Part shown: piece after piece, positions 646 to 62,126 of the stretch
Layout of the letters: each line of letters opens with the position of its first letter
How positions within the stretch are numbered: the stretch's first letter is position 1
Assembly (NCBI RefSeq): GCF_006345805.1
Contig: NW_021832015.1
Coordinates: 1 to 64,000 of the forward strand
DNA: 64,000 bases
Direction: 5' to 3'
DNA from: Octopus sinensis
Taxonomy: Eukaryota
The notes under the pieces: model-generated
Seen by the model: the letters and a program-made list of their open reading frames with translations, nothing else
The model's database searches: none
Told to the model about the DNA's origin: nothing
Made by a program: the position numbers and the translations under genes

Positions 646-647
646 CA

Positions 648-1233
648 ATTAAGGACAACTTCTTAATAAGGAAAACTTAACAAGAAATTATCGGGTAGAT
701 AGCGTGAAAGACCTCATAAGAGAAAAAATTTCGAAAATAATTATTTCTTATTGAACATATTAATTTATATATAGAGGGCATTATTATACATACATGCCAC
801 ACGCTAAGAGGGACAAAATTAGTCATTTCTACCAAAAATTTTACTAATCCCACCGAATGCAATTTTCAAAGTAAGACATTTAAAAATATGGACTTGTATC
901 ACCTGTGATTTCATACCTCTGTATTCATCAGCAAGCCTGGACGTATCATAAATAAACGACCCTACCTCGTCTAAGCCGAGCAGCTAACTGATCAACATCA
1001 ACGAAGCACATGGGTGAGTTTACATATATTACATCCGGTAAATGGCAGACTTTTACGAATTGCATTTTGTCCCTCTTAGCGTGTGGCATGTATGTATAAT
1101 AATGCCTCTATATATAAATAATATGTTCAATAAGAAAGAATTATTTTCGAAATTTTTTCTCTTATGAGGTCTTTCACGCTATCTACCCGATAATTTCTTG
1201 TTAAGTTTTCCTTATTAAGAAGTTGTCCTTAAT
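648..1233. repeat. Inverted repeat, arms 648-819 and 1064-1233, about 244-bp spacer
   Basis: aaggacaacttcttaataagg...acgctaagagggacaaaat is the near-perfect reverse complement of attttgtccctcttagcgt...ccttattaagaagttgtcctt. Confidence 0.93.
891..937 (-). ncRNA. Type I hammerhead ribozyme, canonical core
   Basis: Minus strand: GGCUUG-CUGAUGA-AUAC(agag)GUAU-GAAA-UCAC(ag)GUGA-UA-CAAGUC. 6-bp helix I, intact CUGAUGA and GAAA, paired stems II and III, cleavage triplet AUA. Confidence 0.8.
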
Positions 1234-1247
1234 ATAATAATGCCCTC

Positions 1248-1286
<39 letters not shown>

Positions 1287-11532: not shown

Positions 11533-11725
11533 CAATTTTAGGACACTAACACTATGAAAAACGTGGAAATTTTACCGGTGAGTGTGTTACGTAATAAGGC
11601 ACAAAAAGAAAATGACTCTCCCCAGACACAATAGAATATACTTCAACACACGAACTCATATAAAGAATCTTGCAAACCAAATCCAAAAGCGAAACATTAT
11701 TTGTATTATTATTATTATTATTATT

Positions 11726-29893: not shown

Positions 29894-32800
29894 GAGAGAA
29901 CACCGGGGACGTTTAAGATGTAAGAAGGAAAATACAGAGCTCCGAAATGATGTATTTTGACTCGATATCATCTCCAACGCAACACATGTAAACATGCGTA
30001 GAACATCAAGATCATCCCCGACCCTAAACACCATGTACAAAGGAACTACGAAGAAATTAAATGCCACCGATACTATTCAACCCAAGAATAACAATCGAGC
30101 GGTACGTACATTAAACTTACAACAAAAAATGTACGAAAAACTACACGTGCGAAATAATGTGACAACAGAAATAAACGGACCGGTACCCTACGAAAATGAC
30201 GACCGTCAAAATAATGGGCCGGACGTTGTACCTCATGTCCCGCAAATAAAACCCAAAAGACGTAAATGGACACGTGAGGAATACATTTCTATCTTACACG
30301 CATACTTCACAGCAGTACTCTACCCAAAAAATGAAAATACAACAACACATACATATAAAATATGGAAGGAAAATAATAGAGATATAGACTTGGATACAGC
30401 AATGAACCCTAATAAATTAGCTAACGTACGAAGATACATTCTCAACACAAAAAAAATATCAGAAATAGAAATAGAACACCTAAAAGAAAACATACACCAG
30501 GAAAATGTAGATAGAAGCCACACAACAATGCCCAATAATATAAACACTGAAACTGTAAAACACGAAGACAAACGCAACATTCCCAGAAACACGATGCAAA
30601 CAACGAAGGGGAGCCTAATGATTATGATAATATAAAAAATAAAATAATCAAAGAACTGAAAACCACAGAGCTCAAAATGGACCACCGACCATACCTCCCA
30701 AGAATCAAAATAAACAAAATAACAACACCTATTATAAACAGCATAAACCTAGCCGTCACTGAACTGATAGCCACTGAAACAAAAAAAAGTGATATCACTG
30801 AGCTAAATAACCTAATATACGCAGCAGCCACTGCAGCCACAAAAGAAGCTGGATACTCACCCAAACCCGCCCAAACAGGAGTACCACCACCCAAACAAAC
30901 CCTGTGGATAAATAACATCCAAAGCAAAATAAAAAAAATTAGAAAAGACCTGTCGATTCTTAATGAAATCAGCAAACAATCAACGCTACTGAGCAACAAA
31001 AAGAGAACAAAAATACTCCGCAAATATAACATCACACAGAAAGATTTGCCTGAAATAAAAGAAAAGCTGAAGCAAGATATCCTTGCCAAAGCACAAAGGA
31101 TCCGCCGGTACAAGAAACGCCAACGCTTCTTTGAAGAAAACAAAAAGTTCAACTCCAACCCCCAAAAGTTCTACCAAGAACTGGGCAAAAATAAAATAGA
31201 AGTCACTGCAGCACCAACGGCAGAAGAATTGGAAGAATTCTGGGGAGAAATATGGTCGGCGAACGAACCACCAAAAAAAAGGAGTATCAAAATAACAAAC
31301 TCGGCATCTGAACAACTTTGGACCCCCATAACAACTGAAGAGGTCACCCAGGCACTGCAAAGACTAAGCAACTGGAAGTCACCTGGCATGACAAGATCCC
31401 CAACTTCTGGTTGAAATATCTAACAGGAATGCACAAAAAGCTGGCTGAAACTTAAACAACGTACTAGCAGAGCCAGAGACAATGCCTGAATGGCTCACGA
31501 AGGGGAAAACCATCTTATTCCAAATCAAATGAAACGATAACCAGAAAACTACAGACCAATAACCTGCCTCCCTACTATGTTCAAGGCATTTACTGCAGTG
31601 ATATCACAAAGGCTGAACAAGCACCTGGACGAAGACAAACTGTTCCCAGAAGAGCAGAAAGGATGCCGCAAAGGCTTATATGGCTGTAAAGATCAACTAA
31701 TGATTAATAAAGCCATAACTGAAGACAGCCACAGAGAAGAAGAAAGGCCTCAGTATGGCCTGGATTGACTACAAAAAGGCGTTTGATAGCATCCCCCACA
31801 CATGGATCCTCGAAACACTAGCCATTACAAAGTAGCACCAACAATCATAAAATTCATAGAGCACTCTATGAATAAATGGCAAACAGTCCTACACCTCCAA
31901 ACAAAAGAGGGACTCATGAAAACCAAAGACATCCCCATTAGAAGAGGAATATTCCAGGGAGACACGCTCTCTCCACTCCTTTTCTGCTTGGCACTGTCAC
32001 CTCTATCTGATATGCTAAATAGAACTAGATGCGGATATAAATGTTACGGCAAAACGATCAGCCACCTTTTATATATGGATGACCTAAAACTATACGCTGC
32101 AAATGACAAACAGCTGGAACACTATTAAAGACAGTTCATGGATTTACCAAAGAAATAAATATGAAATTTGGATTAGAAAAATGCGCCAAAGTAACCATGA
32201 AAAGAGGAAAACTAGTTAAGAGTAACAACATCACACTAGATAAAACCAATGAAATAAAGAATTAGACCAAAGCCAAACTTACAAATACTTAGGAATCCAT
32301 GAACTAGATAAGACACAACACACACAAAATGAAAGAGAAAATAAAAAAAGAATATTATTAGACGAGTTAGATCAATACTAAACACAGAGCTCAATGCTAA
32401 AAACAAGATAATAGGTATCAACACTTTAGCTGTCCCGGTTATAAGTTACAGCTACAATATCCTTAACTGGACACGAAATAAACTGACAAAATAGATAGGA
32501 AAACAAGAAAAATAATGACAGGATCTACGATGCCATCACCCAAAATCTGACATAGAAAGACTATATATACAACGTATAGAAGGTGGTAGTAGAGGCCTTA
32601 TACACCTGGAAAACTACTATAAAATAACCACCATAGGACTGCAAAAATATCTACTTCAGAAGGAAGGAAAACTGATCCAGATAGCGGCAAAACACGAGCA
32701 AAACAAAAAACTTCTCAGTATTTAAGGAAGCTGACAAATACAAACAAGAAATCATACCACATACATGAAGACAGAAGAAGAAGAAGAAGAAAGAAACAAC

Positions 32801-33723
32801 AAAAGCTATAAAACAAATGAAATCCAAACTAAAAATAGAACAGCAACGAACCATGATAAAACGATGGCAAGAAAAGCCCCTTCATGGTAAATACTGGACT
32901 AAACTAAACGCAAAAGAAATAGACAAAGAAAATCCCAGCAATGGTTGAGAAGCTCAGGACTCAAAGCAGAAACAGAGGGATTTTTAATTGCAGCACAAGA
33001 CCAAAGCCTCCCCACCAGAAATTACCAAAAACATGTAATGAAAAGAAATATTACAAGTAACTGCAGAATATGTGGAGATGGACAAGAAACAATAAATCAT
33101 ATTATCTCTAGTGCCCAGTCCTGGCTAAGAAGGAATATATTCACAGACATGACAGAGTTGGAACCTACATACATTGGAAGCTATGCCAACATATGGAATA
33201 ACAACAGAAAAAAGATGGTATAGGCACACACCAGAAAAGGTCACAGAAAACGAGAAAGCAACCATACTCTGGGATATGCCGATACACACAGATAGAGAAA
33301 TTAAGGCCAACAGACCAGATATAGTTGTCAGAGATCATGAAGAAAAGAAATGCTTTCTAATTGATGTATCATACCGGCTGATGACAACGTGTCTCTAAAA
33401 GAAATGGAGAAACTCTCAAAATACAAAGACCTGGAAATAGAGGTAACTAGAATGTGGAATCTGAAAACAGAAACAATTCCTATCATAGTAGGTGCATTAG
33501 GCATGATAAAAAAATATTCAGACAAATACATAACAAAAACACCAGGACTTACAATCACATATAACATACAGAAAATTGCACTACTAGGCACTGCACACAT
33601 CCTACGCAGAACACTTTCCATACAATAACCATCAAAGCATCACAACAAATCACAGCACATACCCAAGGCACACAGAGCTGCGCTCGGTAGTGAAGTGAAA
33701 GCACGCTATAAATTAAAAACTAC

Positions 33724-33725
<2 letters not shown>
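29894..33725 (+). mobile_element. R4/Dong-like LINE family A, near full length, frameshifted
   Basis: N-terminal KRRKWTREEY Myb-like motif (ORF 29994-30635), then RT and RLE pieces matching 11726-15040. (TAA)n on both sides. Confidence 0.93.
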
Positions 33726-33767
<42 letters not shown>

Positions 33768-37289: not shown

Positions 37290-37850
37290 ACTAACTTACT
37301 AACACGTCTCTGAAAGCTTGGCGCACCGTGAAAGATGCGTTCGGCTTCTAGTGTTCAAGCACAGCCAATGGAGCTTATCTACATCCACCGTACAGATCGC
37401 AAATTTGTGTTCTGTGTAGCCGACTACTTTAAATTGTGGACAGCATATGCAATTCCTATCTTCTACAATACAGAAAACTCCATCTAGAATCGACCAGGAT
37501 GACCTGATGCCCATGTCTACATTGGTGCATTCAGGTAATCCAGTTGAAACTTGTCAGTCATATTGAAACGACTGGGCAGGTTTAAGAGGCTTTTTGCATC
37601 TTCTCCTATCAGCCTCACACAGTTTAGACGTGTAATGAAGATTTTCCGAGGAACACCTCCCGAAGCTCGAAGAAATTTGGCCGCCCTTCTCCCATTGGAA
37701 AAACATTGATTGCCACAGACCTGAAACGACCACTTTTCGCTACCACCAACGGCCAAAACAACCAACTTGCTGACCAAGCCTGGGAAGATTGGCTTCATCT
37801 CAAGTTTCAGTCCTTTCCGAAACAGCACTGCCATTCCGCGTCCCATTACA
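37290..37850 (-). mobile_element. Second, more decayed Tx1/L1 endonuclease fragment
   Basis: GRGMAVLFRK and LDGVF...YTEHKFAICTV parallel the endonuclease at 36543-37177. Confidence 0.65.
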
Positions 37851-37919
37851 GGTCAATGGAAAGGGGAATGAAGCGGAGATCTCAAATTCATCAAAAATAG
37901 GCACGAAATTTGTTTTTAC

Positions 37920-37990
37920 GCAATGGCTACCACCGGTGCTCCAGCATGGCCGCAGTCAAATGACTGAAACAAGTAAAAGAGTAAAAGAGT
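37920..37990 (+). mobile_element. SINE or LINE 3' tail
   Basis: ccagcatggccgcagtcaaatgactgaaac followed by (AAGTAAAAG)-like repeats. The 13-mer ccagcatggccgc is shared with the CR1 3'UTR at 3640-3652. Confidence 0.55.
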
Positions 37991-38413
37991 ATATGTTCAC
38001 GAAAGAGTATTTTCGAAGACTATGAAAGTTTATCCTTGCAGGGATAAACTCAAAAACGGATAATTTTCTTTTCTTATTTCGATTGAAAGGTATATGGGTT
38101 TCGAACCAAACTGATGCGATAGACTGAGATGCTGCAATATATGGAGCGACAGAACACAAGAGTTGTATCAGGAAATATTGATGGTTGTTAACATACAGAA
38201 TGGGACGACGTGGCGATTACACAATACCAAACATTTTGCAAGTGAACCTAATTCAATGAAACTTCAATATTCACACACACGCACAAGAATATTTGACTGC
38301 AAAATAAATGAATACACTTTCGAAATATTAAGTAAGATTTATGCGGAGAATATCACTGCTGAACAGAGCGGTTCTAAAGATATGTTTAACAGATCCCGAC
38401 CCAAAAACTGACA

Positions 38414-38416
<3 letters not shown>

Positions 38417-38458
<42 letters not shown>

Positions 38459-38588
38459 TCTCTCTCTCTCTTTCTCTTTCTCCTTGTCATTCTCTCTCTT
38501 TCGTTCTCTCTCTCTCTCACTCTCACTCTCTCTCTTTCTCTCTCTGTCTCTCTCTCTCTCTCTGTCTCTGTCTCTCTGTCTCTCTCTG

Positions 38589-38635
<47 letters not shown>

Positions 38636-38874
38636 TTCTCTCATTGAATCTGACTTGTACACGCATACATGAAGACATTCTGTTTACTTTGGAGTTAGCA
38701 ATGGAGGCAACGAACCCAGCTTACAAACGAAAAATATTGTATATGAAGCGTTGGATTAGCAAAGTGTACGGCGTAGAACTACAAAATAATAAATACAACG
38801 TGATTGATTTTCATCTGAAACAATAAAGCAAGCGAGAGAAAAGAGATGGAAGGAAGAAAGAAAGAAAGAAAGAT

Positions 38875-38915
<41 letters not shown>
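38417..38915. repeat. (CA)n, (CT)n and (GAAA)n microsatellites
   Basis: Visible at 38417-38640 and 38855-38915. Confidence 0.95.
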
Positions 38916-38916
<1 letters not shown>

Positions 38917-39537
38917 GTGATCAGAATTGTGAACAATTTTGATTTGATCCAGGTTGAGGATTTTCATTCGTTTATGGATGAGTTACCCAATTTGGTTCCA
39001 AATTTCTTCATTTTATACGTGAAAAAAATTAAATCTGTGTTTCACACATTCAGTTAATCTTCTGTAATTATTTTACGCAATTTAAGTAAAACTCGTATCA
39101 TATCCTCATATAGTGTAAGATATCTGTTCGTCTCCCTCACAGACTAATGTCATCTACACACAATTTAGATATTACATCACCCCAGACATGCATTATTTTC
39201 ATCATCAAAGATATTGAGAATATTCACTGACAGTCACGTGACAAAAACCTAAACACACAACCTTTTGACAAAACGTTGCCTTTTCTCTTTTCTCCTTGGT
39301 AATCTTGTGTCTCAATCCCAAAATCTATGCTAAGCGCATCAATCAAACCTTTATTAGAACTTTCACTCTCTGAAACGAAAACTCTACAAACAATTTTTTA
39401 TCCACAGACACCATTCGACATTGACCAGAGAAATCGTAGAGACTTTTCAAATGCCGACAGTATTGTCTCTCTTTCGATTGAAACATAGAATACAAGTCAA
39501 GGAATGAAATAAACCCAGAAGATTCAAATTTGTTTAC

Positions 39538-46830: not shown

Positions 46831-49800
46831 GTGAACCCAAAACAACAACACATCATGAAATTTTTTGTAAAACTTTTAACAATTGTCAGCACGGAAAAAA
46901 CAGCCTACATACAAAAACAAATATATACACAAACAAAAAAGCCAATGCCACCCAGACGTGCACTCAAAATATTCACAAAGGTAAATAGACCCAATACGCA
47001 AACACAGAAACACAAGATAGCACCAAACAGGCAAGAGGAACCAAAAGTGATAAAAACTATCAATGTAACTCACAAAGAACTAACAGAAAACCAAATCAAA
47101 ATACTCTCCAAAGGGTTCAAGTTTACACCCACCCCACAACACCACAACTACAATGAAATGAAAGAAAACATCGCGGAATTCTGTAGAAATTTACGACTCG
47201 CTGAGGAGCTATACGACAAATACAACGAGGACGAATCGTTGGTCCGAAATAAAAGTAACTACACCCCCTCAAAAGGTAAGAACAAAACTCTTGATCATTT
47301 CTGTGAACACATCTCGAATTACCCATATCAACATATGCACAAACAAAAACACAAACTAAAATTCAGCAAAAAAGAATGGGCTGAGCTGAACAAATTAAAA
47401 GCTGACAAAACAATAACAATCAAAGAGGCTAATAAAGGGAGTGCAGTTGTCTTAATGGACACGGTATTTTATATAACTTTAGTACTATCCATATTGGCAG
47501 ACACAACACATTATGAAAAGGTCCAAAAAAACAGTTAGCAAGAAATAATGAGAGAACTAAAATCCATGTTAAACCTATACAAGGAAGTGCTCACCGACAA
47601 AGAATATGACTATATGACCAATTTCAAAAGTAAATCCAGTCAATTCTACGGTATTCCCAAGATACACAAAGGTGAAAAAATAAGTAACGCATGCAAGATA
47701 ACCACAGACATAATAATCAAAGTCCCTACTCCTAATGATCTCAAATTGAGACCTATAATAGCAGGTCCCGCATGCGAAACCCACTGCCTCATTTACTTTT
47801 TAGATATCCTCTTAAAACCATTCCTCAAGCATGTCAAAAGTTATATAAGGGACGACCTGGATATGCTCAATCACCTTCCTAAAACAATAAACAAAACCAC
47901 CCTACTAGTATCCTTCGATGTAGTCAACCTCTATTCCAATATCCCCCACAACCTAGAAATAGAGGCAATTCAATTCAGGCTAGAGAATTACGCCAACGAA
48001 CTCCCACATCGCATCGAAAACGAATTCGTGATAGAAGGGCTAAAATTCATCCTGGAAAATAACTACTTCGTCTTCAAAGACAACTTCTACCGACAAAAAT
48101 CGGGGACTGCGATGACCACGAGAATGGCCCCCTCCTTTGCTAACCTAGTCAGGGAATATCTAGAAATTAGTCTTTATCGTAAGGTTCTAGAAAAATAGGG
48201 CAGCCCATTCTCCCTCTACATAGAAAATAACTGGAAAAAATACCTGGATGACTGTTTCATTCATTCTTTGGCATGAAAATATAGAGAAACTTAAAGAATT
48301 CCAAGCACTTCTAAATGGACTTGACGTAAACATTCAATTTACGATGGAATATAGCCAGCAACAACTTCCCTTCCTAGACATCCTCATTAAGAAATCTAAC
48401 AACGTAATAGAAACAGATATATACTGTAAGCCTATGGACTCCAAGCAATAGCTACTGTTCAACTAATGCCACCCCAGACACACCAGAAGGAATATCCCAT
48501 TCAACCTAGCAAAAAGGATATGTACTATAGATTCTAATGCAAACACCATAGACACACGATTACATGAACTAAAGGATACACTCATCACTAGCAACTACCC
48601 ACTTTCACTAATTGACATACGCTTTCAACTCAACATCCAAGAACTCAGACATCCCAAATTAAAGACGGATTTACAATCAACAGCCCTACCATACATCTCC
48701 ACACACAACCCTCTCAACAATGAAGCCTACGACACCATCCTCCAAAACATACCCCTGCTAAAAAAGGACCACAGAATGAACTTAATCCTCCAAACACACA
48801 CCATCATTAAAAGCAAGAGACAGCCGAAATCTATGAAAATTCTCCTAATACAAGCCCGAATACGCTCAACAACAACACAGAAGCCATCGGTAAAAAATGC
48901 GGAAGACCCAACTGTGGGCTATGCGTCAATTTGATTGAGGGATCAGAGTTCACCTTCAAACAAGGACAACGTTTCACAGTGAAAAGCAACTTCACATGTG
49001 CTTCGGAGAACCTGATATACGCACTAACCTGCTCTAGGTGTCAAGAACAATACATAAGCCAAACAAAAAACAGTCTACGTAAAAGAAGGCTCTGCACAGA
49101 TCCCAGATCAAAATTCCCCAAAAATTCAAGCTTCAGAATTTTTCCCCTCTACCAATTTAGGGACGATACAACCTGAACCCAACGAATCGGTAAAGAGACT
49201 CTCTTTACTACAAAATACAGACCCCTTTTGAACGCGTCTGCAACAAACGACATACCCACCACGGCCTTAGAATAACACACATACACACGCGAATATTAAA
49301 AATGATACACTCAAGAGATTCTCAAGAATTCATTAAAAAACAGTCCCAATCACTACTATAATCCATAACGTGCCAATTTTAAGTCACTTGACTATTTAAC
49401 ATCTTACTATTTTCATACTACCTACATTCCTTCTTATTCTCCCTTCTCTTTCTTCTTCTTTGTCTTCTTGCTCCTCCTTCTAAATTTGCCACTAATGCTG
49501 TTTAGAATAACACCTACGCAAATTTTATAAAGAAAACATTCAAAAGAGCTATCTCAGGAATTCAACAATTGCTACTACCATCCACAGCAGGTCACTTGAC
49601 CATTCTACTACCATCCTTCTTCCTCTTCTTCTTCTGCTTCTCCTTCTCCTCCTCCTCGCCTTCTTCTTCTTCTTCTACCCTACCAAGAATTCACAACGTC
49701 CCCGAACCCACAAGAGTAAACAAGAGAGACAGAGACAGGCAGAAACAAGGAAAATGCCCCTCGTATTTGAACACTATGCAAATATTCTTTACAAAAAACT

Positions 49801-49925
49801 TTTCTTTTAATTTTTCCAAAATTTAATTGTTTTCCATATTTACAGTTGAAAAAGTCCCAATGACTGAAACCGGTACTGAAATGTTTTTTACAAAATTATT
49901 TTAGCATTTTCTATCTTGACTTTTA
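46831..49925 (+). mobile_element. Penelope-like element (RT plus GIY-YIG), decayed
   Basis: KANKGSAVVLMD, FYGIPKIHK, LRPIIAG, SFDVVNLYSNIPH, YRQKSGTAM...APSFANL, YLDDCF (48241), PFLDI, FTCASENLIYALTCSRCQEQYI. Pyrimidine-rich 3'UTR with a terminal hammerhead. Confidence 0.9.
49843..49878 (+). ncRNA. Minimal type I hammerhead with U3-A8 core
   Basis: CAG-UUGAAAA-AGUC(ccaau)GACU-GAAA-CCGGUA-CUG. Palindromic ACCGGT helix III, triplet GUA. Confidence 0.6.
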
Positions 49926-50124
49926 TATATATATATATATATATAATAATAAATATTAGGGAATAAATCCAAATTTACAGGGAAAAAAATCAGATTTAGG
50001 ATTAAATCCAATTTTATAGTAAAATATTATAAAATATTATTAGAGACAAAACCACTATTTTGCAAAACAAACAAGGAAAGACTTAATCAATACATAAAAT
50101 TTTAATAAAAAGTCAAAAAAACCG

Positions 50125-50167
50125 CCACTACAATCGTTTCTTGTCTTGATCGACAATCTTCAGGTGG
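50125..50167 (-). ncRNA. Type I hammerhead ribozyme (3' repeat copy)
   Basis: CCAC-CUGAAGA-UUGUC(gaucaa)GACAA-GAAA-C(gauu)G-UA-GUGG. Canonical core, triplet GUA. Confidence 0.8.
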
Positions 50168-50761
50168 ACTTCAATCTAAAATATCAATATTTTAAATATA
50201 CAAATAATATTTTAAAATAATTAAAGTATGAATGAAAAAATATAAATATATAATCCATATATAACCCATAATAATCCATATATAATCAATATATAAACAA
50301 TATATAAACTAAAATAAACCTATCAACAATTAAATATAAAATATAAAATATAAAATATAAAACAAAACAAAAAAATAATAATAATATAATAATAAACTAT
50401 ATATACACCCATACACATATACCTAATTATATATAACCATATCTAACTACATACACTAAATCACACACCTATATATATATCCCTATACATACACATAAAA
50501 ACGTCTAGGCAACTATAAATAAATTAAATAGCTAAATACTTCAACACAATACTTATTCATACTCCCACACACACACACATACAACACACATTCACGCTCT
50601 AGAAAACGGACATCACTCAAAATTATGAACGGAGAAATGGAATAAATGGAATTAAAAATTATATTCACTTGGAAAAACGAACACTACTTAAAAATTATGA
50701 ATGAAACAATGCAATAAAACAACAGACATCGCAAATATACACAAATTACTACGAATTCTTT

Positions 50762-53700
50762 AACAAACCTACCATGATAAACCAAAACTCACAAAAACAT
50801 ATAATGATAAAATCTCCCTATACTAAACTCTATAACATACCTATATAGCAATCCCCCTAACCTAAACATTCACACACAAATACACACACGTAAACCACAC
50901 ACCCACGACATATACAAATACCCACACCACTTACACATACCAATACATACATATAAACCTCAACATATACTCCAAAAACCCACTCAACCCCACACAGACA
51001 AATAAACACAAAAATTATGAATGGATTCTTTTATAAAACTACCATGATAAGCTAAAACTCACAAAACAGAAATGATAAAACCTCCCTTTACTAAACACTA
51101 TAACATACTTATATAGCAATCCCTTTAACCTATACATTCACACACCCAAAACACACACGTAAACCACACACCCATAACAAATACAAACACCCACCCCACT
51201 CACACACACCCACAAGTACATATAAGCCTCAACATATACACCAAACAAAATTCTTTACCAAGGAACTTACATATGTATAAATAGTATAACCGCTCTGGAA
51301 ACGAACGTCTCTAAATTAATAAATGGAGAATGGAATAAATGGAATTAAAAATAATATTCACGTGGCAAAACGAACACCACTCAAAATTATGAATGAAACA
51401 ATGTAATAAAACACCAACATCGAAAATAGACAAATTACTACGAATTCCCTAAAAAAAACCATGATAAACCAAAACTCTTAAAAACATATAACGATAAAAT
51501 CTCCCTTTGCTAAACTCTATAACAAACCTATATAGCAATCCCCCTAACCTAAACATTCACACACAAATACACACACGTAAACCACAGACCCACGACTTAT
51601 ACACATACCTATACTAACTTATAAACCTCAATATACACCAAAACCCACTCCCTCCCTCCCTCCCCACACAGACAAATTAACACATACATCCCAAAACCTA
51701 AATAACAAACCATATAACATTCACACACAAACACACACACACGCAAAACACCACACAACAACAGATACATATACTCCCTCACATATACGCATATACATAC
51801 TCACTAAACTCGATATATACAACAATATTTACACCCCCACTCATACAGATAAATAAATTATACAACTAAAAACTCACACACAATCTCATATACATAAACA
51901 CTCCTATGAAAACAACATTAAATATATCGTATTAACCAGAATATCAAAAATAACAATATGACATAAGGATAAATAAAATACGTACTTACATTTCAGTTTC
52001 AAATTATAAGTGAAATTAAATTCTTAGCCGTTAAAAAATCAAACCAAAATTACGTTACCATAGAAATAACTTATGTAAAAAAAGAATACGCGTCATGGAA
52101 AGTAAACGTCATTTAAAATTATGAATGGAGAAAAAAAATAAATGGAACTAAAAACTTATCCACGTGGCAAACCAACACTACTTAAAAAAATTTATTATGA
52201 ATGGATTCTTTAAAAAACTACCATGAAAACATTATATACATTTATGAGCTTTAGCTCACCTTAGCAGCTCTAACAACAACTTGCAGCAACCCAAACCTAT
52301 TCTCGATGCCTACCTCACTACTACAACTATTCCACTCACAATTCCAAGCAACGCTAGTCCACCCCCGGTTACAATCCCACTCCACCCATTCATTCACAAT
52401 TACAACGACGTTCGCCTCCACAGCGCTACATATAAGCCTCAACATATACAACCGGAGATTCACACCGTGCGGATGGTAAGAGTAATTCCTTAACAACCTA
52501 CCATGATAAACAAAACTCACAAAAACATATAATGATAAAATCTCCCTTTACTAAACTCTATAACATACCTATATAGCAATCCCCCTAACCTAAACATTCA
52601 CACACAAATACACAACGTAAACCACACACCCACGACATATACAAATACCCACACCACTTACACATACCATACATACATATAAACCTCAACATATACTCCA
52701 AAAACCCACTCAACCCCACACAGACAAATAAACACAAAAATTATGAATGGATTCTTTTATAAAACTACCATGATAAGCTAAAACTCACAAAACAAATAAT
52801 AAACCTCCCTTTACTAAACACTATAACATACTTATATAGCAATCCCTTTAACCTATACATTCACACACAAAACACACACTAAACCACACACCCATAACAA
52901 ATACAAACACCCACCCCACCCACACACACCCCAAGTACAAATAAGCCTCACATATACACCAAACAAAATTACTTTACCAAGGAACTTAACATATGTATAA
53001 AAAATATAACCGCTCTGGAAACGAACATCTCTAAATTAATGAATGGAGAAATGGAATAAATGGAATTAAAAATAATATTCACATAGCAAAACGAACACCA
53101 CTCAAAATTATGAATGAAACAATGTAATAAAACAACCAACATCGAAAATAGACAAATTACCACGAATTCCCTAAAAAAAACATGATAAACCAAAACTCTT
53201 AAAACCTATAACGATAAAATCTCCCTTTGCTAAACTCTATAACAAACCTATATAGCAATCCCCCTAACCTAAACTTTCACACACAAATACACACACGTAA
53301 ACCACAGACCCACGACTTATACACATACCTATACTAACTTATAAACCTCATATACACCAAAACCCACTCCCTCCCCACACAGACAAATTAACACATACAT
53401 CCCAAAACCTAAATAACAAACCCATATACACATTCACACACAAACACACACACCGCAAACACACACACACACAACAGATACATATACTCCCTCACATATA
53501 CGCATATACATACTCACTAAACTCGATATATACAACATATTTACACACCACACTCATACAGATAAATAAATCATATACAACTAAAAACTCACACACAATC
53601 TCTCATATACATAAACACTCCTATGAAAACAACATTAAATATATCGTAATTAACCAGAATATCAAAAATAACAATATGACATAAGGATAAATAAAATACA

Positions 53701-54190
53701 TACTTACAAGTCAGTTTCAAATTATGAAGTGAAATTAAATTCTTATCCGTTAAAAAATCAAACCAAAATTACGTTACCATAGAAATAACTTATGTAAAAA
53801 AAGAATACGCGCCATGGAAGTAAACGTCATTTAAAATTATGAATGGAGAAAGAATAAATGGAACTAAAAACTATATCCACGTGGCAAACCATCACTACTT
53901 AAAAAAATTTATTATGAATGGATTCTTTAAAAAACTACCATGAAAAATCATTATATTCATTTATGAGCTTTAGCTCACCTTAGCAGCTCTAACAAACAAC
54001 TTGCAGCAACCCAACCCTTCCATGCCTACCTCCACTACTACTACACTATTCCACTCACAATTCCAAGCAACGCTAGTCCACCACCCGGTTACAATTCCCA
54101 ACTCCACCCATTCATTCACAATTTCAACGACGTTCGCCTCCACAGCGCTACATATAAGCCTCAACATATACACCGGAGATTCACTTTCAC
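50762..54190. repeat. Tandem duplication of about 1.7 kb (50762-52455 repeated at 52495-54190) made of diverged subrepeats
   Basis: The same succession of motifs (ctaccatgataaacc, atagcaatccccctaacc, gtaaaccacacaccc, ttagctcaccttagcagc) occurs twice. Confidence 0.88.
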
Positions 54191-55344
54191 ATCCGTGCGG
54201 ATGGGTGAGAGTATACATTGAGTGTAGTGATGGGGCTCCCATTACTATACACAATTGTACCTGTGTGGTAGTCTCCATGTGTATATTCACACACGGGTAT
54301 AAATGCAGGGGGTACACGCGCACGTCATTAGCGTGTACCCCTCACATGTACATATGCATGCTATTTGGGCTCGATATATGCAACAATGTAATCGCGCCCG
54401 CATACATGCATATGGGCGAGTTGCACAATCAAAAAACGCACACATGTGTGTATGCGTTCCCTGGTTGTGCAATTCACCCATCTTGGTGTGAGTGGGTGTA
54501 AACGTATCACTGTGGATGTCGAGCTAGATACGTATGTATATGAGTGTGTATTGGGGGTTTGTACGTATTTAATTGTGTGCATGTGCTTCACGCACGTGCG
54601 TCCATGTATGGATGAATATATTGGGATTGCTATGTGGGTGTAAATGGGTATGGAGGGGGGAGTTTTGTCATTGTATGGGTGTGGGTTTCATATGTGATGG
54701 TGGTTAGTTGGTAATTTTTGTATGTTCTGTATATTTGGGTTAGTTATGTATTATTCTAGTGTGTATAATTGTATACATATGATTGGTGTGAGTGGGATTA
54801 CGCCCATTTTTGGGGATGTATGTGTTTATTTATCCGTATGGGGCGGGAGTGGCCGTTAGGTGTATATGTTGAGGCTCACATGCAATTCCAGGTACAGCGA
54901 ATGAAGTGGGCACTTATATTTGTTATGGGTGTTGTACTTTATTATAACAGACAATACCCAAATAAAATCTGTCAATTCAACATACCAAATAAAAAACAAA
55001 AAACAAAGGGATCATAAACATTCACACATACATACAAAACTCAATAAACACACTAATAACACCACATCAACATATAAATATATCCTCCAAAATACATATA
55101 ACAAATGCATAATAAAATACATAATAAAATAAATAAAAATAAAAATAAAAAAATATATAAATAAAAAAATTAAAAAAATCTAATATAAATTATTAAAGTT
55201 TAACATACCATACTGTTAAATTAATACATTAAAAATGAACTAATTAAAACAAAGAAATATCAATAAAGACTAACTATAATTAAAGCCTAGGCAACATAAC
55301 AAAAATATATTATCTAAACTAATTTAAACTAAACTAAAGTAACC

Positions 55345-57872
55345 TAAAGGGGACTATTATTGCTATTTATCATGAACTTATTATATAGGTAAAGTAACTT
55401 ATGTCTGCATTTTATTTTGCGCTCTTCACCAGTATTAAGTAATTATCATACTTATAAAATAAAATTTCTTTAAACTCATTAGAGCATAAATAACAACAAT
55501 TAGCTCCTATAGTATATGATTTAGTTTTACAAAATTATTTCCCAAATTAAACTATAATTAATATTTAGTGATTTAAGACTCCAAATGTACTTACTAAGTC
55601 CGGTTGAGTTGATTAAGTTTTTATTTTTAAAAGAATTCATATGTTGTGCGATTCTTAGTTTTATTTTTGAGGAAGTAGAACCTATATAAACCGCTTTTTT
55701 GTAATTATTATTCTTAAAGTTATTATCATGTAATGTAACTATACATTTATACACTACATCGTTAATATCACAATTATTATTTAATATACAATTAGATTTA
55801 TCTCTACATGTACAATTAATATAAGTCTTATCATTATTAATATTATTATCAAATAATTTCTTTTATAAAAATTATTCAGTTTATATTTATTAAATGAAGA
55901 AATAATGTTACCAACATTATTAGTGGTAGAGTAACCAACTCCAAAATTATTAAAAGAGAAAATGTTTCTATATTTACGATTATCTCTAATAAATAGTTCT
56001 ATAACATCTAAAATCTCTTTAATAATATTCGTTTTTACTTGATCTCCATAAGGAACTATTAACCAAATTTTATTCTTATTAACCTTATTATTATTATCAT
56101 TATTATAAATATATTTATAATTCTTTATTTTATTAAAATTATTATCAGAATTATATCTATGTACAGCATTTAAGGAATTATTAATATTATTAAATTTATC
56201 AATATAATTATTATAATAATTATTAAATTTATTTTTATTTTTATTATTCTTATTTATATTATTATTATTATATTATTATTATTATTATTATTATTATTTA
56301 TATTTTATCATTTTTATTATTTTTTTTTATAATATCTATTATTTTTACCACTAAACCTAACAAAATTATAATTATTATTAGAAGTATCTCGAAAATTAAC
56401 AATTAAATCTTTATCACTAATATTATAAAATTTAATATTCCTATTATAACCTGCCCCTCTAAGGGCCTCATTATAATATTTAGCATGTTTATTAAAAATC
56501 TCTATATCATAAGAGAGTAATGAAATACGTTTACTTATATTATTAATCAACGATTTTTTAATAGAAAATGGGTGATTACTATTAACATTTATATATCTAA
56601 GGTTCTCATTAAGTTTATGATATGGTTGTGTTTTACCTGTAATAAGATTAAAATTAACATCTAAATAATTAACATTATAATTCTCCTTATATATAGTAAT
56701 ACTTAAACCATATCTTTTAAAGAAACTATATAGTTTTTTCTTATATACTTCTAGATTCCTATTAGTACAATTCTTTGTAACTAGTAGAAGATCGTCTCTA
56801 TATAAACCACCCTCTATCTTAAGATTTTCTAATTGGAGTTCAGATAAAAGAAAAATACCTACTAAATCAGTAGCCTGTGCAGAATCTGGTGCTCCCATAG
56901 GTATATCAAAACAATCTCTAGTATCATTCCTAGCCCATAATTTATTTTTATATTTAATTAGCGATTTCCTAGCCATTTTAATTACATTAACTTCTTCCCG
57001 TGACATACCCACTTTATTCATTGCGAAAATAAGCGCTTTATTAAACACAATTTCATTAATAGAAGAATAATAATTATCTATATCTATTTGAATAAATTTA
57101 TAACGATTTTATCTTTAATATTATTAAACCATTTCAATGTATTATTATTACTAAACCATAATTTTAAATAATTAAGTTTATTTAACTTATCAATATATTT
57201 ATCTAAAATAAATTTACTTAATTTACCTAGGTCCGATTTACATGGGCAAATTAATCTAACTTTAGGGTCTGAATAAAAATTATTTTATGGTCTTTAAGAG
57301 TAATTCTGGGGTGCAAAGGTACATAAGGTTCAGTTTTATTATCCAACTCATATTTTAACATTACTACTTTAGAGGCCTTATTAATATTATAAAGAATATC
57401 ATCTGGAACAATTTTATATTTTTTAATTATTTCTTTCCCTAATAGTTTATCATATAATTTAACATCTAATTTATATAAGTTCCTTGTTTTATCAGATTGT
57501 ACTATAATACCATCCATATTTCTCATATCTTTAATTTTAATTGCTAAATTCCTTAAATATTCATTATTTCTATTTGGGTATTTATGGAATTCAATATTTT
57601 TTACCACCTTCCAAATACTATCTTCAAGTAATTGTAATTCTTTATTAAATGGAGGTTCCTTTCTAGATTTAAATTTAGAGGTAAAATTATCATTCCTACT
57701 ATCAATATCATTAAATAATAAAAATTATAGTAAAAAGCTTTCCATTTAATTCTAGAAATAAAATCTTTAACATTATTAACAAGTTTCAAGATAAATTCCT
57801 TTCTAGAAGGAATAGGATATCTTTCAAAGATGAATCCCAAAACAGCGGTTCTATCTTACCTGTAAAATCCAT
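55345..57872 (-). pseudogene. Naiad-type PLE ORF (RT, Asn-rich linker, GIY-YIG), broken by 1-bp frameshifts
   Basis: MDFTGK..SLKDIPIPSRKEF..RIKWKAF, SDKTRNLY, RITLKDHK, RLICPCKSDLGKLSK, IQIDIDNYYSSI, DIPMGAPDSAQ, GLYRDD, YLDV, SNHP, CTCR..C, VYIGST..KLRIAQH, TGLSKYIW, CYLC, CRH. Confidence 0.88.
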
Positions 57873-58106
57873 AATTTACGAAATTGAGGTATTACACTCA
57901 ATATACAAAATTATCAATATTATATAAATATAAATATTAGGGAATAAATCCAAATTTACAGGGAAAAAAATCAGATTTAGGATTAAATCCAATTTTATAG
58001 TAAAATATTATAAAATATTATTAGAGACAAAACCACTATTTTGCAAAACAAACAAGGAAAGACTTAATCAATACATAAAATTTTAATAAATAAAAAAAAA
58101 AAACCG

Positions 58107-58149
58107 CCACTACAATCGTTTCTTGTCTTGATCGACAATCTTCAGGTGG
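58107..58149 (-). ncRNA. Type I hammerhead ribozyme (5' repeat copy)
   Basis: Identical to 50125-50167. Confidence 0.8.
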
Positions 58150-61100
58150 ACTTCAATCTAAAATATCAATATTTTAAAATATACAAATAATAATTTTAAA
58201 ATAATTAAAGTATGAATGAAAAAATATAAATATATAATCCATATATAACCCATAAATAATCCATATATAATCAATATATAAACAATATATAAACTAAAAT
58301 AAACCTATCAACAATTAAATATAAAATATAAAATATAAAATATAAAACAAAACAAAAAAATAATAATAATATAATAATAAACTATATATACACCCATACA
58401 CATATACCTAATTATATATAACCATATCTAACTACATACACTAAATCACACACCTATATATATATCCCTATACACATAAAAACGTCTAGGCAACTATAAA
58501 TAATTAAATAGCTAAATACTTCAACACAATACTTATTCATACTCCCACACACACACACATACAACACACATTCACGCTCTAGAAAACGGACATCACTCAA
58601 AATTATGAACGGAGAAATGGAATAAATGGAATTAAAAATTATATTCACTTGGAAAAACGAACACTACTAAAAATTATGAATGAAACAATGCAATAAAACA
58701 ACAGACATCGCAAATACACAAATTACTACGAATTCTTAACAAACCTACCATGATAAACCAAAACTCACAAAAACATATAATGATAAAATCTCCCTATACT
58801 AAACTCTATAACATACTTATATAGCAATCCCCCTAACCTAAACATTCACACACAAATACACACACGTAAACCACACACCCACGACATATACAAATACCCA
58901 CACCACTTACACATACCATACATACATATAAACCTCAACATATACTCCAAAAACCCACTCAACCCCACACAGACAAATAAACACAAAAATTATGAATGGA
59001 TTCTTTTATAAAACTACCATGATAAGCTAAAACTCACAAAACAGAAATGATAAAACCTCCCTTTACTAAACACTATAACATACTTATATAGCAATCCCTT
59101 AACCTATACATTCACACACAAAACACACACGTAAACCACACCCCCATAACAAATACAAACACCCACCCCACTCACACACACCCACAAGTACATATAAGCC
59201 TCAACATATACACCAAACAAAATTACTTTACTTTACAAGGAACTTAACATATGTATAAATAGTATAACCGCTCTGGAAACGAACATCTCTAAATTAATAA
59301 ATGGAGAAATGGAATAAATGGAATTAAAAATAATATTCACGTGGCAAAACGAACACCACTCAAAATTATGAATGAAACAATGTATAAAACAACCAACATC
59401 GAAAATAGACAAATTACTACGAATTCCCTAAAAAAAACCATGATAAACCAAAACTCTTAAAAAACATAACGATAAAATCTCCCTTTGCTAAACTCTATAA
59501 CAAACCTATATAGCAATCCCCCTAACCTAAACATTCACACACAAATACACACACGTAAACCACAGACCCACGACTTATACACATACCTATACTAACTTAT
59601 AAACCTCAATATACACCAAAACCCACTCCCTCCCCACACAGACAAATTAACACATACATCCCAAAACCTAAATAACAAACCCATATACACATTCACACAC
59701 AAACACACACACACGCAAAACACACACACACAACAGATACATATACTCCCTCACATATACGCATATACATACTCACTAAACTCGATATATACAACAATAT
59801 TTACACACCCACACTCATACAGATAAATAAATTATACAACTAAAAACTCACACACAATCTCATATACATAAACACTCCTATGAAAACAACATTAAATATA
59901 TCGTAATTAACCAGAATATCAAAAATAACAATATGACATAAGGATAAATAAAATACGTACTTACATTTCAGTTTCAAATTATAAAGTGAAATTAAATTCT
60001 TGCGTATTCTTTTTTTACATAAGTTATTTCTATGGTAACGTAATTTTGGTTTGATTTTTTTAACGGCTAAGAATTGAATTTCACTTTATAATTTGAAACT
60101 GAAATGTAAGTACGTATTTTATTTATCCTTATGTCATATTGTTATTTTTGATATTCTGGTTAATTACGATATATTTAATGTTGTTTTCATAGGAGTGTTT
60201 ATGTATATGAGATTGTGTGTGAGTTTTTAGTTGTATAATTTATTTATCTGTATGAGTGTGGTGTGTAAATATGTTGTATATATCGAGTTTAGTGAGTATG
60301 TATATGCGTATATGTGAGGGAGTATATGTATCTGTTGTGTGTGTGTGTTTTGCGTGTGTGTGTGTTGTGTGTGAATGTGTATATGGGTTTGTTATTTAGG
60401 TTTTGGGATGTATGTGTTAATTTGTCTGTGTGGGGAGGGAGTGGGTTTTGGTGTATATTGAGGTTTATAAGTTAGTATAGGTATGTGTATAAGTCGTGGG
60501 TCTGTGGTTTACGTGTGTGTATTTGTGTGTGAATGTTTAGGTTAGGGGGATTGCTATATAGGTTTGTTATAGAGTTTAGCAAAGGGAGATTTTATCGTTA
60601 TATGTTTTTAAGAGTTTTGGTTTATCATGGTTTTTTTTAGGGAATTCGTAGTAATTTGTCTATTTTCGATGTTGGTTGTTTTATTACATTGTTTCATTCA
60701 TAATTTTTGAGTGGTGTTCGTTTTGCCACGTGAATATTATTTTTAATTCCATTTATTCCATTTCTCCATTTATTAATTTAGAGATGTTCGTTTCCAGAGC
60801 GGTTATACTATTTATACATATGTTAAGTTCCTTGGTAAAGTAATTTTGTTTGGTGTATATGTTGAGGCTTATATGTACTTGTGGGTGTGTGTGAGTGGGG
60901 TGGGTGTTTGTATTTGTTATGGGTGTGTGGTTTACGTGTGTGTTTTTGTGTGTGAATGTATAGGTTAAAGGGATTGCTATATAAGTATGTTATAGTGTTT
61001 AGTAAAGGGGGTTTTATCATTTCTGTTTTGTGAGTTTTAGCTTATCATGGTAGTTTTATAAAAGAATCCATTCATAATTTTTGTGTTTATTTGTCTGTGT

Positions 61101-61956
61101 GGGGTTGAGTGGGTTTTTGGAGTATATGTGAGGTTTATATGTATGTATTGGTATGTGTAAGTGGTGTGGGTATTTGTATATGTCGTGGGTGTGTGGTTTA
61201 CGTGTGTGTATTTGTGTGTGAATGTTTAGTTAGGGGCATTGCTATATAGGTATGTTATAGAGTTTAGTATAGGGAGATTTTATCATTATATGTTTTTGTG
61301 AGTTTTGGTTTATCATGGTAGGTTTGTTAAAGAATTCGTAGTAATTTGTATATTTGCGATGTCTGTTGTTTTATTGCATTGTTTCATTCATAATTTTTAA
61401 GTAGTGTTCGTTTTCCAAGTGAATATAATTTTTAATTCCATTTATTCCATTTCTCCGTTCATAATTTTGAGTGATGTCCGTTTTCTAGCGTGAATGTGTG
61501 TTGTATGTGTGTGTGTGTGGGAGTATGAATAAGTATTGTGTTGAATTTAGCTATTTAATTTATTTATAGTTGCCTAGACGTTTTTATGTGTATGTATAGG
61601 GATATATATATAGGTGTGTGATTTAGTGTATGTAGTTAGATATGGTTATATATAATTAGGTATATGTGTATGGGTGTATATATAGTTTATTATTATATTA
61701 TTATTATTTTTTTGTTTTGTTTTATATTTTATATTTTATATTTTATATTTTATATTTTATATTTTATATTTTATATTTTATATTTTATATTTAATTGTTG
61801 ATAGGTTTATTTTAGTTTATATATTGTTATATATTGATTATATATGGATTATTTATGGGTTATATATGGATTATATATTTATTTTTTCATTCATACTTTA
61901 ATTATTTTAAAATTATTATTTGTATATTTTAAAATATTGATATTTTAGATTGAAGT

Positions 61957-61999
61957 CCACCTGAAGATTGTCGATCAAGACAAGAAACGATTGTAGTGG
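61957..61999 (+). ncRNA. Type I hammerhead ribozyme (inverted arm copy)
   Basis: ccacctgaagattgtcgatcaagacaagaaacgattgtagtgg on the plus strand. Confidence 0.8.
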
Positions 62000-62084
62000 C
62001 GGTTTTTTGACTTTTTATTAAAATTTTATGTATTGATTAAGTCTTTCCTTGTTTGTTTTGCAAATAGTGGTTTTGTCTCTAATA

Positions 62085-62126
<42 letters not shown>

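What the first reader, a model, noticed from the sequence alone, without database searches (positions are those of the whole stretch)
49950..62087. 12-kb Naiad-type Penelope element whose terminal repeats are 2-kb satellite units carrying ribozymes
Seen: a 2.5-kb very AT-rich RT plus GIY-YIG ORF is embedded in about 9.5 kb of its own repeats (direct copies 49950-52024 and 57931-60000, a 1.7-kb tandem extension, and an inverted copy). Each full copy has an intact hammerhead about 175-215 bp from its end. Known: PLEs have pseudo-LTRs, hammerheads and frequent inverted 5' repeats; Naiad is a PLE clade with a C-terminal GIY-YIG lacking the CCHH motif. Inference: pseudo-LTRs this long and built from tandem subrepeats are unusual, so this may be a family that amplifies satellite DNA through retrotransposition, with ribozyme-defined RNA ends.
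Basis: partly seen in the sequence, partly recalled or inferred. Interest (0 to 1): 0.85.

Follow-up and report, generated by a model that had tools for sequence, protein, structure and literature searches.

The report
Octopus Hydra-clade Penelope retrotransposon insertion
This is one fairly young insertion of a Penelope-like retrotransposon of the already described "Hydra" clade (not "Naiad") in an octopus-type genome, ordinary in layout except for an unusually long, repeat-filled tail between its gene and its hammerhead ribozyme.

Summary
The described geometry is real and the coordinates are accurate. On the minus strand, between two (TA)n microsatellites (49924-49945 and 62090-62125), lie: an inverted 5'-truncated copy, a direct 5'-truncated copy (pseudo-LTR), and a 7.98-kb unit. 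That unit holds a 2.5-kb AT-rich RT plus C-terminal GIY-YIG coding region and 5.4 kb of T/G-rich non-coding sequence.

Each of the three repeat copies carries a minimal type-I hammerhead 176-218 nt from its 3' end. The three copies differ by only 0.5-0.8% in substitutions, in a star-like pattern. This fits one canonical PLE insertion event.

The clade label is wrong. Naiads have an N-terminal endonuclease and no canonical hammerhead. This protein has the published Hydra-clade hallmarks: DKT, R/KWK, CxCx5C linker, no CCHH, CxxC and CxH motifs, and a (TA)n target.

Relatives have 2.5-3.2-kb units, so the long tail (0.27/0.7-kb subrepeats plus a 1.73-kb internal duplication) is the one unusual feature, seen in one copy only. 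"Satellite" and "ribozyme-defined ends" are not supported: copy termini lie 179 nt beyond the predicted cleavage site. Whether the family always carries this tail could not be tested.

The parts
49924..49945 (.). (TA)11 microsatellite at the 3' boundary of the insertion. It is shared tail-to-tail with the 3' end of a neighbouring Neptune-like PLE on the + strand.
49946..52484 (-). 3'-terminal part of the full-length unit (copy c1). It holds the 3' terminus ...CCCTAATATTTAT (49949-49961), a 179-nt tail, the hammerhead, a T/G-rich body with 267/417/696-nt subrepeats (50595-51860), and a GC-richer 360-nt segment (52125-52484).
50125..50167 (-). Minimal type-I hammerhead motif. Predicted cleavage is between 50129 and 50128.
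52485..54213 (-). Internal 1.73-kb tandem duplicate of 50754-52484. It lacks the hammerhead and tail. It is older than the insertion: 2.2-2.9% substitution divergence against 0.5-0.8% among the three terminal copies.
54214..55343 (-). Unique 3' non-coding stretch. 54214-54950 is C-rich on the sense strand (opposite skew) and has weak 61-63% resemblance to inverted body sequence. 54951-55343 is T-rich. The first ~100 nt after the stop codon are shared with the O. vulgaris copy L001.
55344..57872 (-). Coding region (ATG 57872-57870, TAG 55346-55344). Order: N-terminal KWK and DKT motifs; RT core 57099-56320; an (AAT)n/poly-Asn stretch at about 56350-56100; CxCx5C linker plus GIY-YIG-type endonuclease 55817-55344. 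At least 8 frame changes as assembled.
57873..57929 (-). 57-nt 5' leader between the end of the upstream copy and the ATG.
57930..60001 (-). Upstream direct 5'-truncated copy (pseudo-LTR). It is the last ~2.07 kb of the unit, with a complete 3' terminus.
58107..58149 (-). Hammerhead motif in the pseudo-LTR. The core starts 273 nt upstream of the ATG.
60002..62089 (+). Inverted 5'-truncated copy, joined head-to-head to the pseudo-LTR. It lacks the last 87 nt of the unit.
61957..61999 (+). Hammerhead motif in the inverted copy.
62090..62125 (.). (TA)18 microsatellite at the other boundary of the insertion.

Best explanation
A single, fairly recent insertion of a Hydra-clade Penelope-like retrotransposon into a (TA)n microsatellite of an octopus-type genome, with the canonical PLE insertion layout.

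LAYOUT (shown), read on the minus strand
- Inverted 5'-truncated copy (62089 to 60002).
- Direct 5'-truncated copy, the pseudo-LTR (60001 to 57930).
- Full-length unit (57929 to 49949, 7.98 kb).

The full-length unit consists of:
- a 57-nt leader;
- a 2.5-kb RT-endonuclease gene;
- a 5.4-kb C-poor, T/G-rich 3' non-coding region;
- a minimal hammerhead plus a 179-nt tail at the very end.

The terminal repeats are long only because the 3' non-coding region is long and both extra copies were truncated about 2.1 kb from the 3' end.

MECHANISM (inferred)
- The GIY-YIG endonuclease nicks (TA)n.
- Reverse transcription starts at the RNA 3' end (...CCCUAAUAUU).
- Template switching produces the partial tandem and the inverted copy.
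- Transcription starts in the pseudo-LTR.
- The hammerheads can only pair as dimers between neighbouring copies, and they do not set the ends of integrated copies.
- The long tail grew by expansion of subrepeats in the stop-to-hammerhead interval. That interval is already repeat-prone in relatives.
For: CLADE
- The protein is 36-38% identical to about 700-aa proteins, among 189 profile hits that include Holothuria and Stylophora proteins.
- It shares their DKT, R/KWK, CxCx5C, CxxC...E and N...CxH motifs, and like them lacks the two Cys between GIY and YIG.
- This matches the Hydra description in PMC8557442.
- It shows no significant BLASTP similarity to the neighbouring canonical PLE RT.

ARCHITECTURE
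- (TA)n lies at both outer ends and at no internal junction.
- The two truncated copies are joined head-to-head at 60001/60002.
- The inverted copy lacks an 87-nt tail. The same feature occurs in a 350-bp mini-insertion of the same 3' end in O. vulgaris, L001 7640-7990.

SINGLE EVENT
- Over 1946 columns the three copies show 9, 3 and 5 private substitutions, with pairwise divergence of 0.5-0.8%.
- In the 4-way comparison with the internal duplicate as outgroup, no derived site is shared by the two upstream copies.
- The internal duplicate is older, at 2.2-2.9%.

GENE AND REPEAT BELONG TOGETHER
- The only hammerhead and 3' terminus downstream of the gene are those at 50167-49949.
- The hammerhead-to-ATG distance across the pseudo-LTR junction (273 nt) resembles the 190-217 nt seen in relatives L002b, L003, L004 and L005.
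- The sense strand is C-poor (3-11% C) through both gene and repeat.

RELATIVES
- Related elements also have subrepeats between stop codon and hammerhead, on a smaller scale: L003 has about 850 nt, and L002b has at least 520 nt of T/G-rich repeats.

HAMMERHEAD
- Descriptor and shuffle test. Dimer fold. It matches the published minimal/dimeric PLE type (PMC4209133).
Against: - Only one copy with this geometry was seen.
- The one other ORF copy of the same family that could be fetched is L001 in O. vulgaris (92% nt identity, single open frame from RT to EN). It stops about 100 nt after the stop codon and has neither the repeat nor a hammerhead.
- Described Hydra elements are under 3 kb, and the relatives fetched have 2.5-3.2-kb units.
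- The GIY-YIG fold is not recovered by Pfam or PDB sequence search. By structure it is only the top, non-significant hit: I-TevI, E = 0.97.
- Hammerhead activity and RNA ends are untested.
- No RT phylogeny against reference clades was built.
Confidence: 0.6

Rival explanations
1. Two elements rather than one. The T/G-rich repeat ending in hammerhead plus tail is a non-autonomous derivative that shares only its 3' end with a short (~2.7 kb) autonomous Hydra element. The composite arose either by separate insertions into the same (TA)n hot spot or by template switching between two RNAs during one event.
For: - The L001 ORF copy ends about 100 nt after the stop codon, without the repeat.
- The 3' tail moves on its own, as in the L001 7640-7990 mini-insertion.
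- (TA)n sites in this genome collect several PLE insertions.
- Non-autonomous PLE derivatives that share 3' ends with autonomous families are documented (PMC8557442; bioRxiv 10.64898/2026.07.22.740005).
- Described Hydra elements are under 3 kb.
Against: - There is no hammerhead, no 3' terminus and no (TA)n between the stop codon and the downstream repeat. The ORF element would therefore have to be 3'-truncated, which target-primed reverse transcription does not normally produce.
- The hammerhead-to-ATG arrangement across the junction mimics that of relatives.
- The three copies are equidistant, and the two upstream copies share no derived site.
Confidence: 0.27
2. A short PLE inserted into a pre-existing host satellite array made of 1.7-2 kb units.
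For: The gene is flanked on both sides by the same repeat, and there is a 1.73-kb tandem duplication.
Against: - The whole composite is bounded by (TA)n. The repeat's end is an exact retroelement terminus, reused in O. vulgaris with the same inverted/direct signature.
- The flanks of the gene are not contiguous positions of one monomer.
- The upstream repeats are a head-to-head pair of 5'-truncated copies, not an array.
- No other copy of the repeat body occurs in the 64-kb window or in 65 kb of other octopus DNA.
Confidence: 0.05
3. Assembly artefact. The palindrome and tandem copies were created by mis-joining of reads from a repeated element.
For: - PLE tandem and inverted structures are known to trouble assemblies (PMC8557442).
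- The density of 1-nt indels between copies is unusually high, which suggests consensus errors.
Against: - The copies differ by private substitutions and have different truncation points (2096 vs 2165). They have different outer ends, with the 87-nt tail present or absent, and clean (TA)n boundaries.
- The layout is the textbook PLE one.
Confidence: 0.05

Closest known systems
Hydra clade of Penelope-like elements (Craig, Yushenova, Rodriguez & Arkhipova 2021, PMC8557442)
   Same: - Single RT gene with a C-terminal GIY-YIG endonuclease.
- DKT instead of DKG, and an R/KWK motif.
- CxCx5C linker and no CCHH motif.
- CxxC and CxH motifs around the conserved E and N.
- Hammerhead present.
- Insertion into (TA)n.
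- Reported from aquatic invertebrates, including molluscs.
   Different: - Described families are under 3 kb. Here the unit is 7.98 kb, because 5.2 kb (3.4 kb without the internal duplication) lies between stop codon and hammerhead.
- The coding region is 20% GC and has an (AAT)n/poly-Asn insert between the RT thumb and the linker.
- The window copy reads KWK, not RWK.
Canonical PLE insertion structure (Penelope of Drosophila virilis and other EN+ PLEs)
   Same: - Partial tandem that forms pseudo-LTRs.
- Adjacent inverted 5'-truncated copy.
- An extension ("tail") present at one end only.
- Hammerhead inside the pseudo-LTR.
- ATG close to the pseudo-LTR junction, so transcription probably starts in the pseudo-LTR.
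   Different: - The tail is 87 nt rather than 30-40 bp.
- The pseudo-LTR contains no coding sequence, because the 3' non-coding region exceeds the truncation length.
Minimal/dimeric PLE hammerheads (Cervera & de la Pena 2014, PMC4209133)
   Same: - Type I motif with a short helix I (4 bp) and a 2-bp helix III capped by a 4-nt near-palindromic loop.
- The monomer fold is unstable, and a dimer forms an extended helix III.
   Different: - Helix II is 5 bp rather than 7-8 bp.
- It is not detected by the Rfam hammerhead models.
- Cleavage is untested.
Metazoan non-LTR retrozymes (Cervera & de la Pena 2020, PMC7229834; Li et al. 2026 preprint)
   Same: Hammerhead-bearing non-coding repeats related to PLE pseudo-LTRs, thought to be mobilised by PLE enzymes.
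   Different: - Retrozymes are tandem monomers of a few hundred nt, each with its own hammerhead.
- Here there is one hammerhead per 2-8 kb, and the subrepeats carry none.
Satellite-like arrays carried inside mobile elements in molluscs (e.g. Helentron-borne arrays in Crassostrea gigas, PMC7492417)
   Same: Tandem repeats embedded in a transposable element, which can therefore be dispersed.
   Different: - That is a different element class with a DNA rolling-circle mechanism.
- No dispersal of the repeat body has been shown here.

Membership tests
Hydra-clade PLE | Single ORF with RT followed by a C-terminal GIY-YIG endonuclease | tested here: met
   - The order N-terminal motifs, RT, linker, GIY...YIG...R..H...E...N holds on one strand.
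- The O. vulgaris copy has RT through EN in one open frame.
- Fold support is weak: I-TevI is the top Foldseek hit, but E = 0.97.
Hydra-clade PLE | CCHH motif absent from the endonuclease (no two Cys between GIY and YIG) | tested here: met
   VVYKC-x17-VYIGST contains a single Cys. Relatives have none.
Hydra-clade PLE | [quoted passage not shown] | tested here: met
   CTCRDKSNC, CYLCSNE and KCRH are present. The Cys columns are invariant in 6-7 sequences.
Hydra-clade PLE | DKG changed to DKT; RWK motif near the N terminus | tested here: met
   SDKTRNLY is present. The window reads SRIKWKAF (KWK), while O. bimaculoides L002b and other relatives read R(L/M)RWKAF.
Hydra-clade PLE | Canonical hammerhead present | tested here: met
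   The motif passes the descriptor with 0.003 expected by chance. Related elements carry the same type. Rfam models do not score it.
Hydra-clade PLE | Insertion into (TA)n | tested here: met
   (TA)11 and (TA)18 lie at the two outer ends.
Hydra-clade PLE | Short element (<3 kb) | tested here: not met
   The unit is 7981 nt, from 57929 to 49949. This is a described tendency ("generally short"), not a defining character.
Hydra-clade PLE | RT groups with Hydra references in a phylogeny | not tested
   No reference alignment was available. The nearest homologues are ~700-aa proteins with Hydra motifs, including Holothuria and Stylophora.
Naiad-clade PLE | N-terminal GIY-YIG endonuclease joined to the RT by a CxC domain | tested here: not met
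   The endonuclease is C-terminal. Definition from PMC8557442.
Naiad-clade PLE | CCHH retained in the EN; no canonical hammerhead | tested here: not met
   CCHH is absent and a hammerhead is present.
Metazoan non-LTR retrozyme | Tandem monomers of about 170-400 nt, each containing a hammerhead | tested here: not met
   There is one hammerhead per copy, located in the tail. The 267/696-nt subrepeats have none.
Satellite DNA | Long head-to-tail arrays of a monomer, found at many sites independently of a mobile element | not testable with these tools
   - Only about 2.5 copies of a 1.73-kb segment occur here.
- No further copies occur in the window, L001 or L002.
- The genome itself could not be searched.

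The most novel reading that the evidence does not exclude
An octopus lineage of Hydra-clade PLEs has evolved a retrotransposing unit whose 3' non-coding region is a multi-kilobase array of tandem subrepeats. Its frequent 5'-truncated, tandem and inverted insertions at (TA)n sites would then seed satellite-like repeat clusters around the genome. This would be a retrotransposition route from PLE tails to tandem DNA, related to but distinct from retrozymes.
Probability: 0.2. Interest if true: 0.5.

Novelty: new member of a known kind. Interest (0 to 1): 0.3.

Why it matters
- The main value is correct annotation. It documents a Hydra-clade PLE in a cephalopod and corrects the Naiad label.
- It gives a clean example of the PLE inverted / pseudo-LTR / full-length layout at a (TA)n target.
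- If the long repetitive tail proves typical of the family, it would show that the stop-to-hammerhead interval of PLEs can expand more than ten-fold. It would also show that this interval can be spread as truncated copies, which bears on how tandem repeats and hammerhead-bearing non-autonomous elements arise from PLEs.
- The copy termini lie 179 nt beyond the predicted cleavage site. This adds a data point against the idea that hammerheads define the ends of integrated PLE copies.

Tried and rejected
- Rfam: a gathering-threshold scan of the window, a permissive scan of 49-63 kb, and a permissive scan of 121 nt around the motif all found no hammerhead. The motif was assessed with my own descriptor instead.
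- Pfam on the pieces and on relatives, and a PDB profile search of the EN domain, gave no RT or GIY-YIG hit.
- More octopus copies were sought with three protein searches. Only P0001 and P0002 are octopus proteins.
- Exact look-up of ten window ORFs found none in the collection.
- Two metagenome DNA scans, for the hammerhead and for the tail, returned nothing.
- I suspected a 28-nt hairpin at the 5' side of the downstream copy. It was an alignment artefact of the head-to-head junction.
- I tested whether L001 is syntenic with the window. It is not; the two share only repeats.
- The 54214-54950 spacer resembles inverted repeat body at only 61-63% identity in low-complexity sequence, which is not enough to claim homology.
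- The T/G-rich tail of the O. bimaculoides relative shares composition with this repeat but no homology.
- TRF finds no tandem array in the repeat body or in relatives' tails. The subrepeats were seen only by BLAST and the repeat finder.
Full report
OBSERVATION

- Direct copies: 49930-52025 matches 57912-60001 (97.35%).
- Inverted copy: 50015-52125 matches 62107-59973 (95.0%).
- Tandem duplication: 50754-52484 matches 52484-54213 (94.6%).

The interval 55-58 kb is 20-22% GC. The repeats have a GC skew of about -0.6 on the + strand, which flips to +0.6 in the inverted copy.

Exact landmarks:
- The copy terminus ...CCCTAATATTTAT sits at 49949 and at 57930.
- The inverted copy ends at about 62086-62089.
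- (TA)11 lies at 49924-49945 and (TA)18 at 62090-62125.

Everything reads on the minus strand.

THE GENE

Three-frame translation and tblastn give one RT-to-endonuclease coding region from ATG 57872 to TAG 55344.

As assembled it changes frame at least eight times, always through indels.
- An 89-92% identical 5'-truncated copy in Octopus vulgaris (L001 26723-28369) reads from RT to the stop in a single frame.
- Compared with that copy, the window has a 50-nt insertion in an (AAT)n run and several 1-nt indels.
- The non-coding repeat copies also differ by 14-17 mostly 1-nt indel events per 1.29 kb, while differing by fewer than 25 substitutions.
- The frameshifts may therefore be consensus noise. 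I do not judge the gene dead or alive.

The nearest named proteins are from O. vulgaris (89%) and O. bimaculoides (59%). A 2.8-kb unrelated repeat is 96.7% identical between the window and O. vulgaris. The window is thus from an octopus closely related to, or the same as, O. vulgaris.

CLADE

Craig et al. 2021 (PMC8557442) define Naiad/Chlamys by an N-terminal endonuclease and the lack of canonical hammerheads. They define Hydra as a C-terminal-EN clade with these features:
- no CCHH motif;
- a CxCx5C linker;
- DKT in place of DKG;
- an RWK motif;
- CxxC and CxH motifs near the conserved E and N;
- hammerheads;
- (TA)n targets.

A profile search found 189 relatives. Most are 700-720-aa proteins on 2.3-3.3-kb contigs, and they include Holothuria and Stylophora proteins.

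In the alignment with six of them, all of these motifs are present in the window protein, which reads KWK rather than RWK. The RT shows no significant BLASTP similarity to the canonical PLE lying next to it.

Pfam and PDB sequence searches do not recognise the endonuclease. An AlphaFold model of a relative's EN domain (pLDDT 74.7) has a beta-beta-alpha-alpha-beta-alpha order. Its top Foldseek hit is the I-TevI catalytic domain, but that hit is not significant (E = 0.97).

I file the element under Hydra. The Naiad label fails on domain order, on CCHH and on the presence of a hammerhead.

HAMMERHEAD

The identical 43-mer CCAC-CUGAAGA-UUGUC-GAUCAA-GACAA-GAAA-C-GAUU-G-UA|GUGG occurs in all three copies.
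- My descriptor requires helix I of at least 4 bp, helix II of at least 3 bp, a paired 15.2-16.2 position and a UH cleavage site. It finds these three sites plus one at 931(-). The mean in 300 dinucleotide shuffles is 0.003.
- The monomer fold costs +2.0 kcal/mol. Two copies co-fold at -22.4 kcal/mol, with an 8-bp intermolecular helix III.
- This is the minimal/dimeric type described for PLEs, which cleaves poorly in vitro (PMC4209133).
- Rfam does not detect it.

Relatives carry hammerheads of the same GAAAC-N4-6-GUA style.

ARCHITECTURE AND HISTORY

At 60001/60002 the direct upstream copy and the inverted copy are joined head-to-head.
- The direct copy is truncated 2096 nt from the 3' end.
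- The inverted copy is truncated 2165 nt from the 3' end.
- The downstream copy simply continues upstream.
- The "2-kb unit" is therefore a truncation product, not a module.

The inverted copy lacks the last 87 nt. A 350-bp inverted-plus-direct mini-insertion of the same tail in O. vulgaris shows the same cut (L001 7640-7990, with its 3' end on (TA)n).

Divergence:
- Over 1946 ungapped columns the three copies have 9, 3 and 5 private substitutions, and pairwise divergence is 0.5-0.8%.
- In the 4-way comparison with the internal duplicate, the two upstream copies share no derived site.
- The internal 1.73-kb duplicate is 2.2-2.9% diverged and so predates the event.

This is the textbook PLE composite of inverted copy, pseudo-LTR and full-length copy. 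It was made in one event, or in nearly simultaneous events, from a template that already carried the long tail.

IS THE LONG REPEAT PART OF THE ELEMENT?

For:
- The only hammerhead and terminus downstream of the gene are at the far end of the repeat.
- No internal junction carries (TA)n.
- The hammerhead lies 273 nt upstream of the ATG across the pseudo-LTR junction. In relatives the distance is 190-217 nt (L003, L004, L005 and the degenerate one in O. bimaculoides L002b).
- The sense strand is C-poor through both gene and repeat.
- Relatives also have subrepeats between stop codon and hammerhead. L003 has about 850 nt with ~150-nt repeats. L002b has at least 520 nt of T/G-rich 195-234-nt repeats running to the end of the locus.

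Against:
- The L001 ORF fragment ends about 100 nt after the stop codon with no repeat.
- Relatives have units of 2513 bp (L005, a tandem array) and 3185 bp (L003). L006 has a 3' UTR of about 100 nt.
- Only one copy with this geometry was seen.

I put the single-long-element reading at about 0.6. A two-element reading (a non-autonomous derivative plus a short autonomous element) gets about 0.27. Pre-existing satellite and assembly artefact get about 0.05 each.

WHAT IS NOT SUPPORTED

- "Satellite": only about 2.5 copies of a 1.73-kb segment are present. Its internal subrepeats have offsets of 267, 417 and 696 nt at 82-84% identity. No copy of the repeat body occurs elsewhere in 129 kb of octopus DNA examined.
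- "Ribozyme-defined ends": integrated copies end 179 nt past the predicted cleavage site, both here and in O. vulgaris. In relative L006 the terminus is also downstream of the ribozyme.

LIMITS

- The octopus genome itself could not be searched. All three protein searches, the exact look-ups and both metagenome scans yielded no further octopus loci.
- No reference-based RT tree was built.

Noticed in passing
window 47059-49945 (+ strand): A second, degenerate PLE of the canonical Neptune/Nematis type. It has a GxKF motif, a CX4CxxC linker and two Cys between GIY and YIG. It ends tail-to-tail on the same (TA)n as the Hydra element. Its last ~240 nt (49697-49935) occur three times in O. vulgaris L001 (30045-31378), including an inverted-plus-direct pair next to (TA)n.
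   Followed up: partly
window 640-1255: A ~610-bp insertion between two (TA)n runs, with ~200-bp terminal inverted repeats and a different hammerhead at 889-931 (-). It looks like an inverted-plus-direct pair of a truncated PLE 3' end from another family. Further descriptor hits lie at L001 41747(-) and L002 4101(+).
   Followed up: partly
window 11696-14460 (+) and 30998-33765 (-): Two inverted copies, 17 kb apart, of a 2.8-kb strongly AT-skewed repeat. They are 96.6-96.8% identical to O. vulgaris L001 18928-21699 and 92% identical to 37786-39231. The repeat was not classified.
   Followed up: no
window 49946-62089 (repeat copies): 1-nt indels outnumber or equal substitutions between copies that differ by under 1% in substitutions (14-17 events per 1.29 kb). 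This suggests either consensus errors in this AT-rich region or a high real indel rate. It makes reading-frame calls unreliable here.
   Followed up: partly
window 56100-56350: An (AAT)n/poly-Asn low-complexity insert lies between the RT thumb and the endonuclease linker. It is shared with the O. vulgaris copy and absent from non-octopus relatives. The window copy has a further 50-nt expansion at 56319.
   Followed up: partly
L005 (ENA ERZ26692762 ctg75357, 7621 bp): This contig is a head-to-tail array of three Hydra-type units with a period of 2513 bp (ORF 2112 nt plus a 401-nt spacer with a hammerhead). Its name ends in "_c", which some assemblers use to mark circular contigs. It could be a collapsed tandem array or a circle.
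   Followed up: no
L002 17383-17425: The O. bimaculoides relative has a decayed hammerhead, with CCGACGA in place of CUGAUGA, about 210 nt upstream of its ATG. This shows that the hammerhead-to-ATG arrangement is conserved within octopus Hydra elements.
   Followed up: partly
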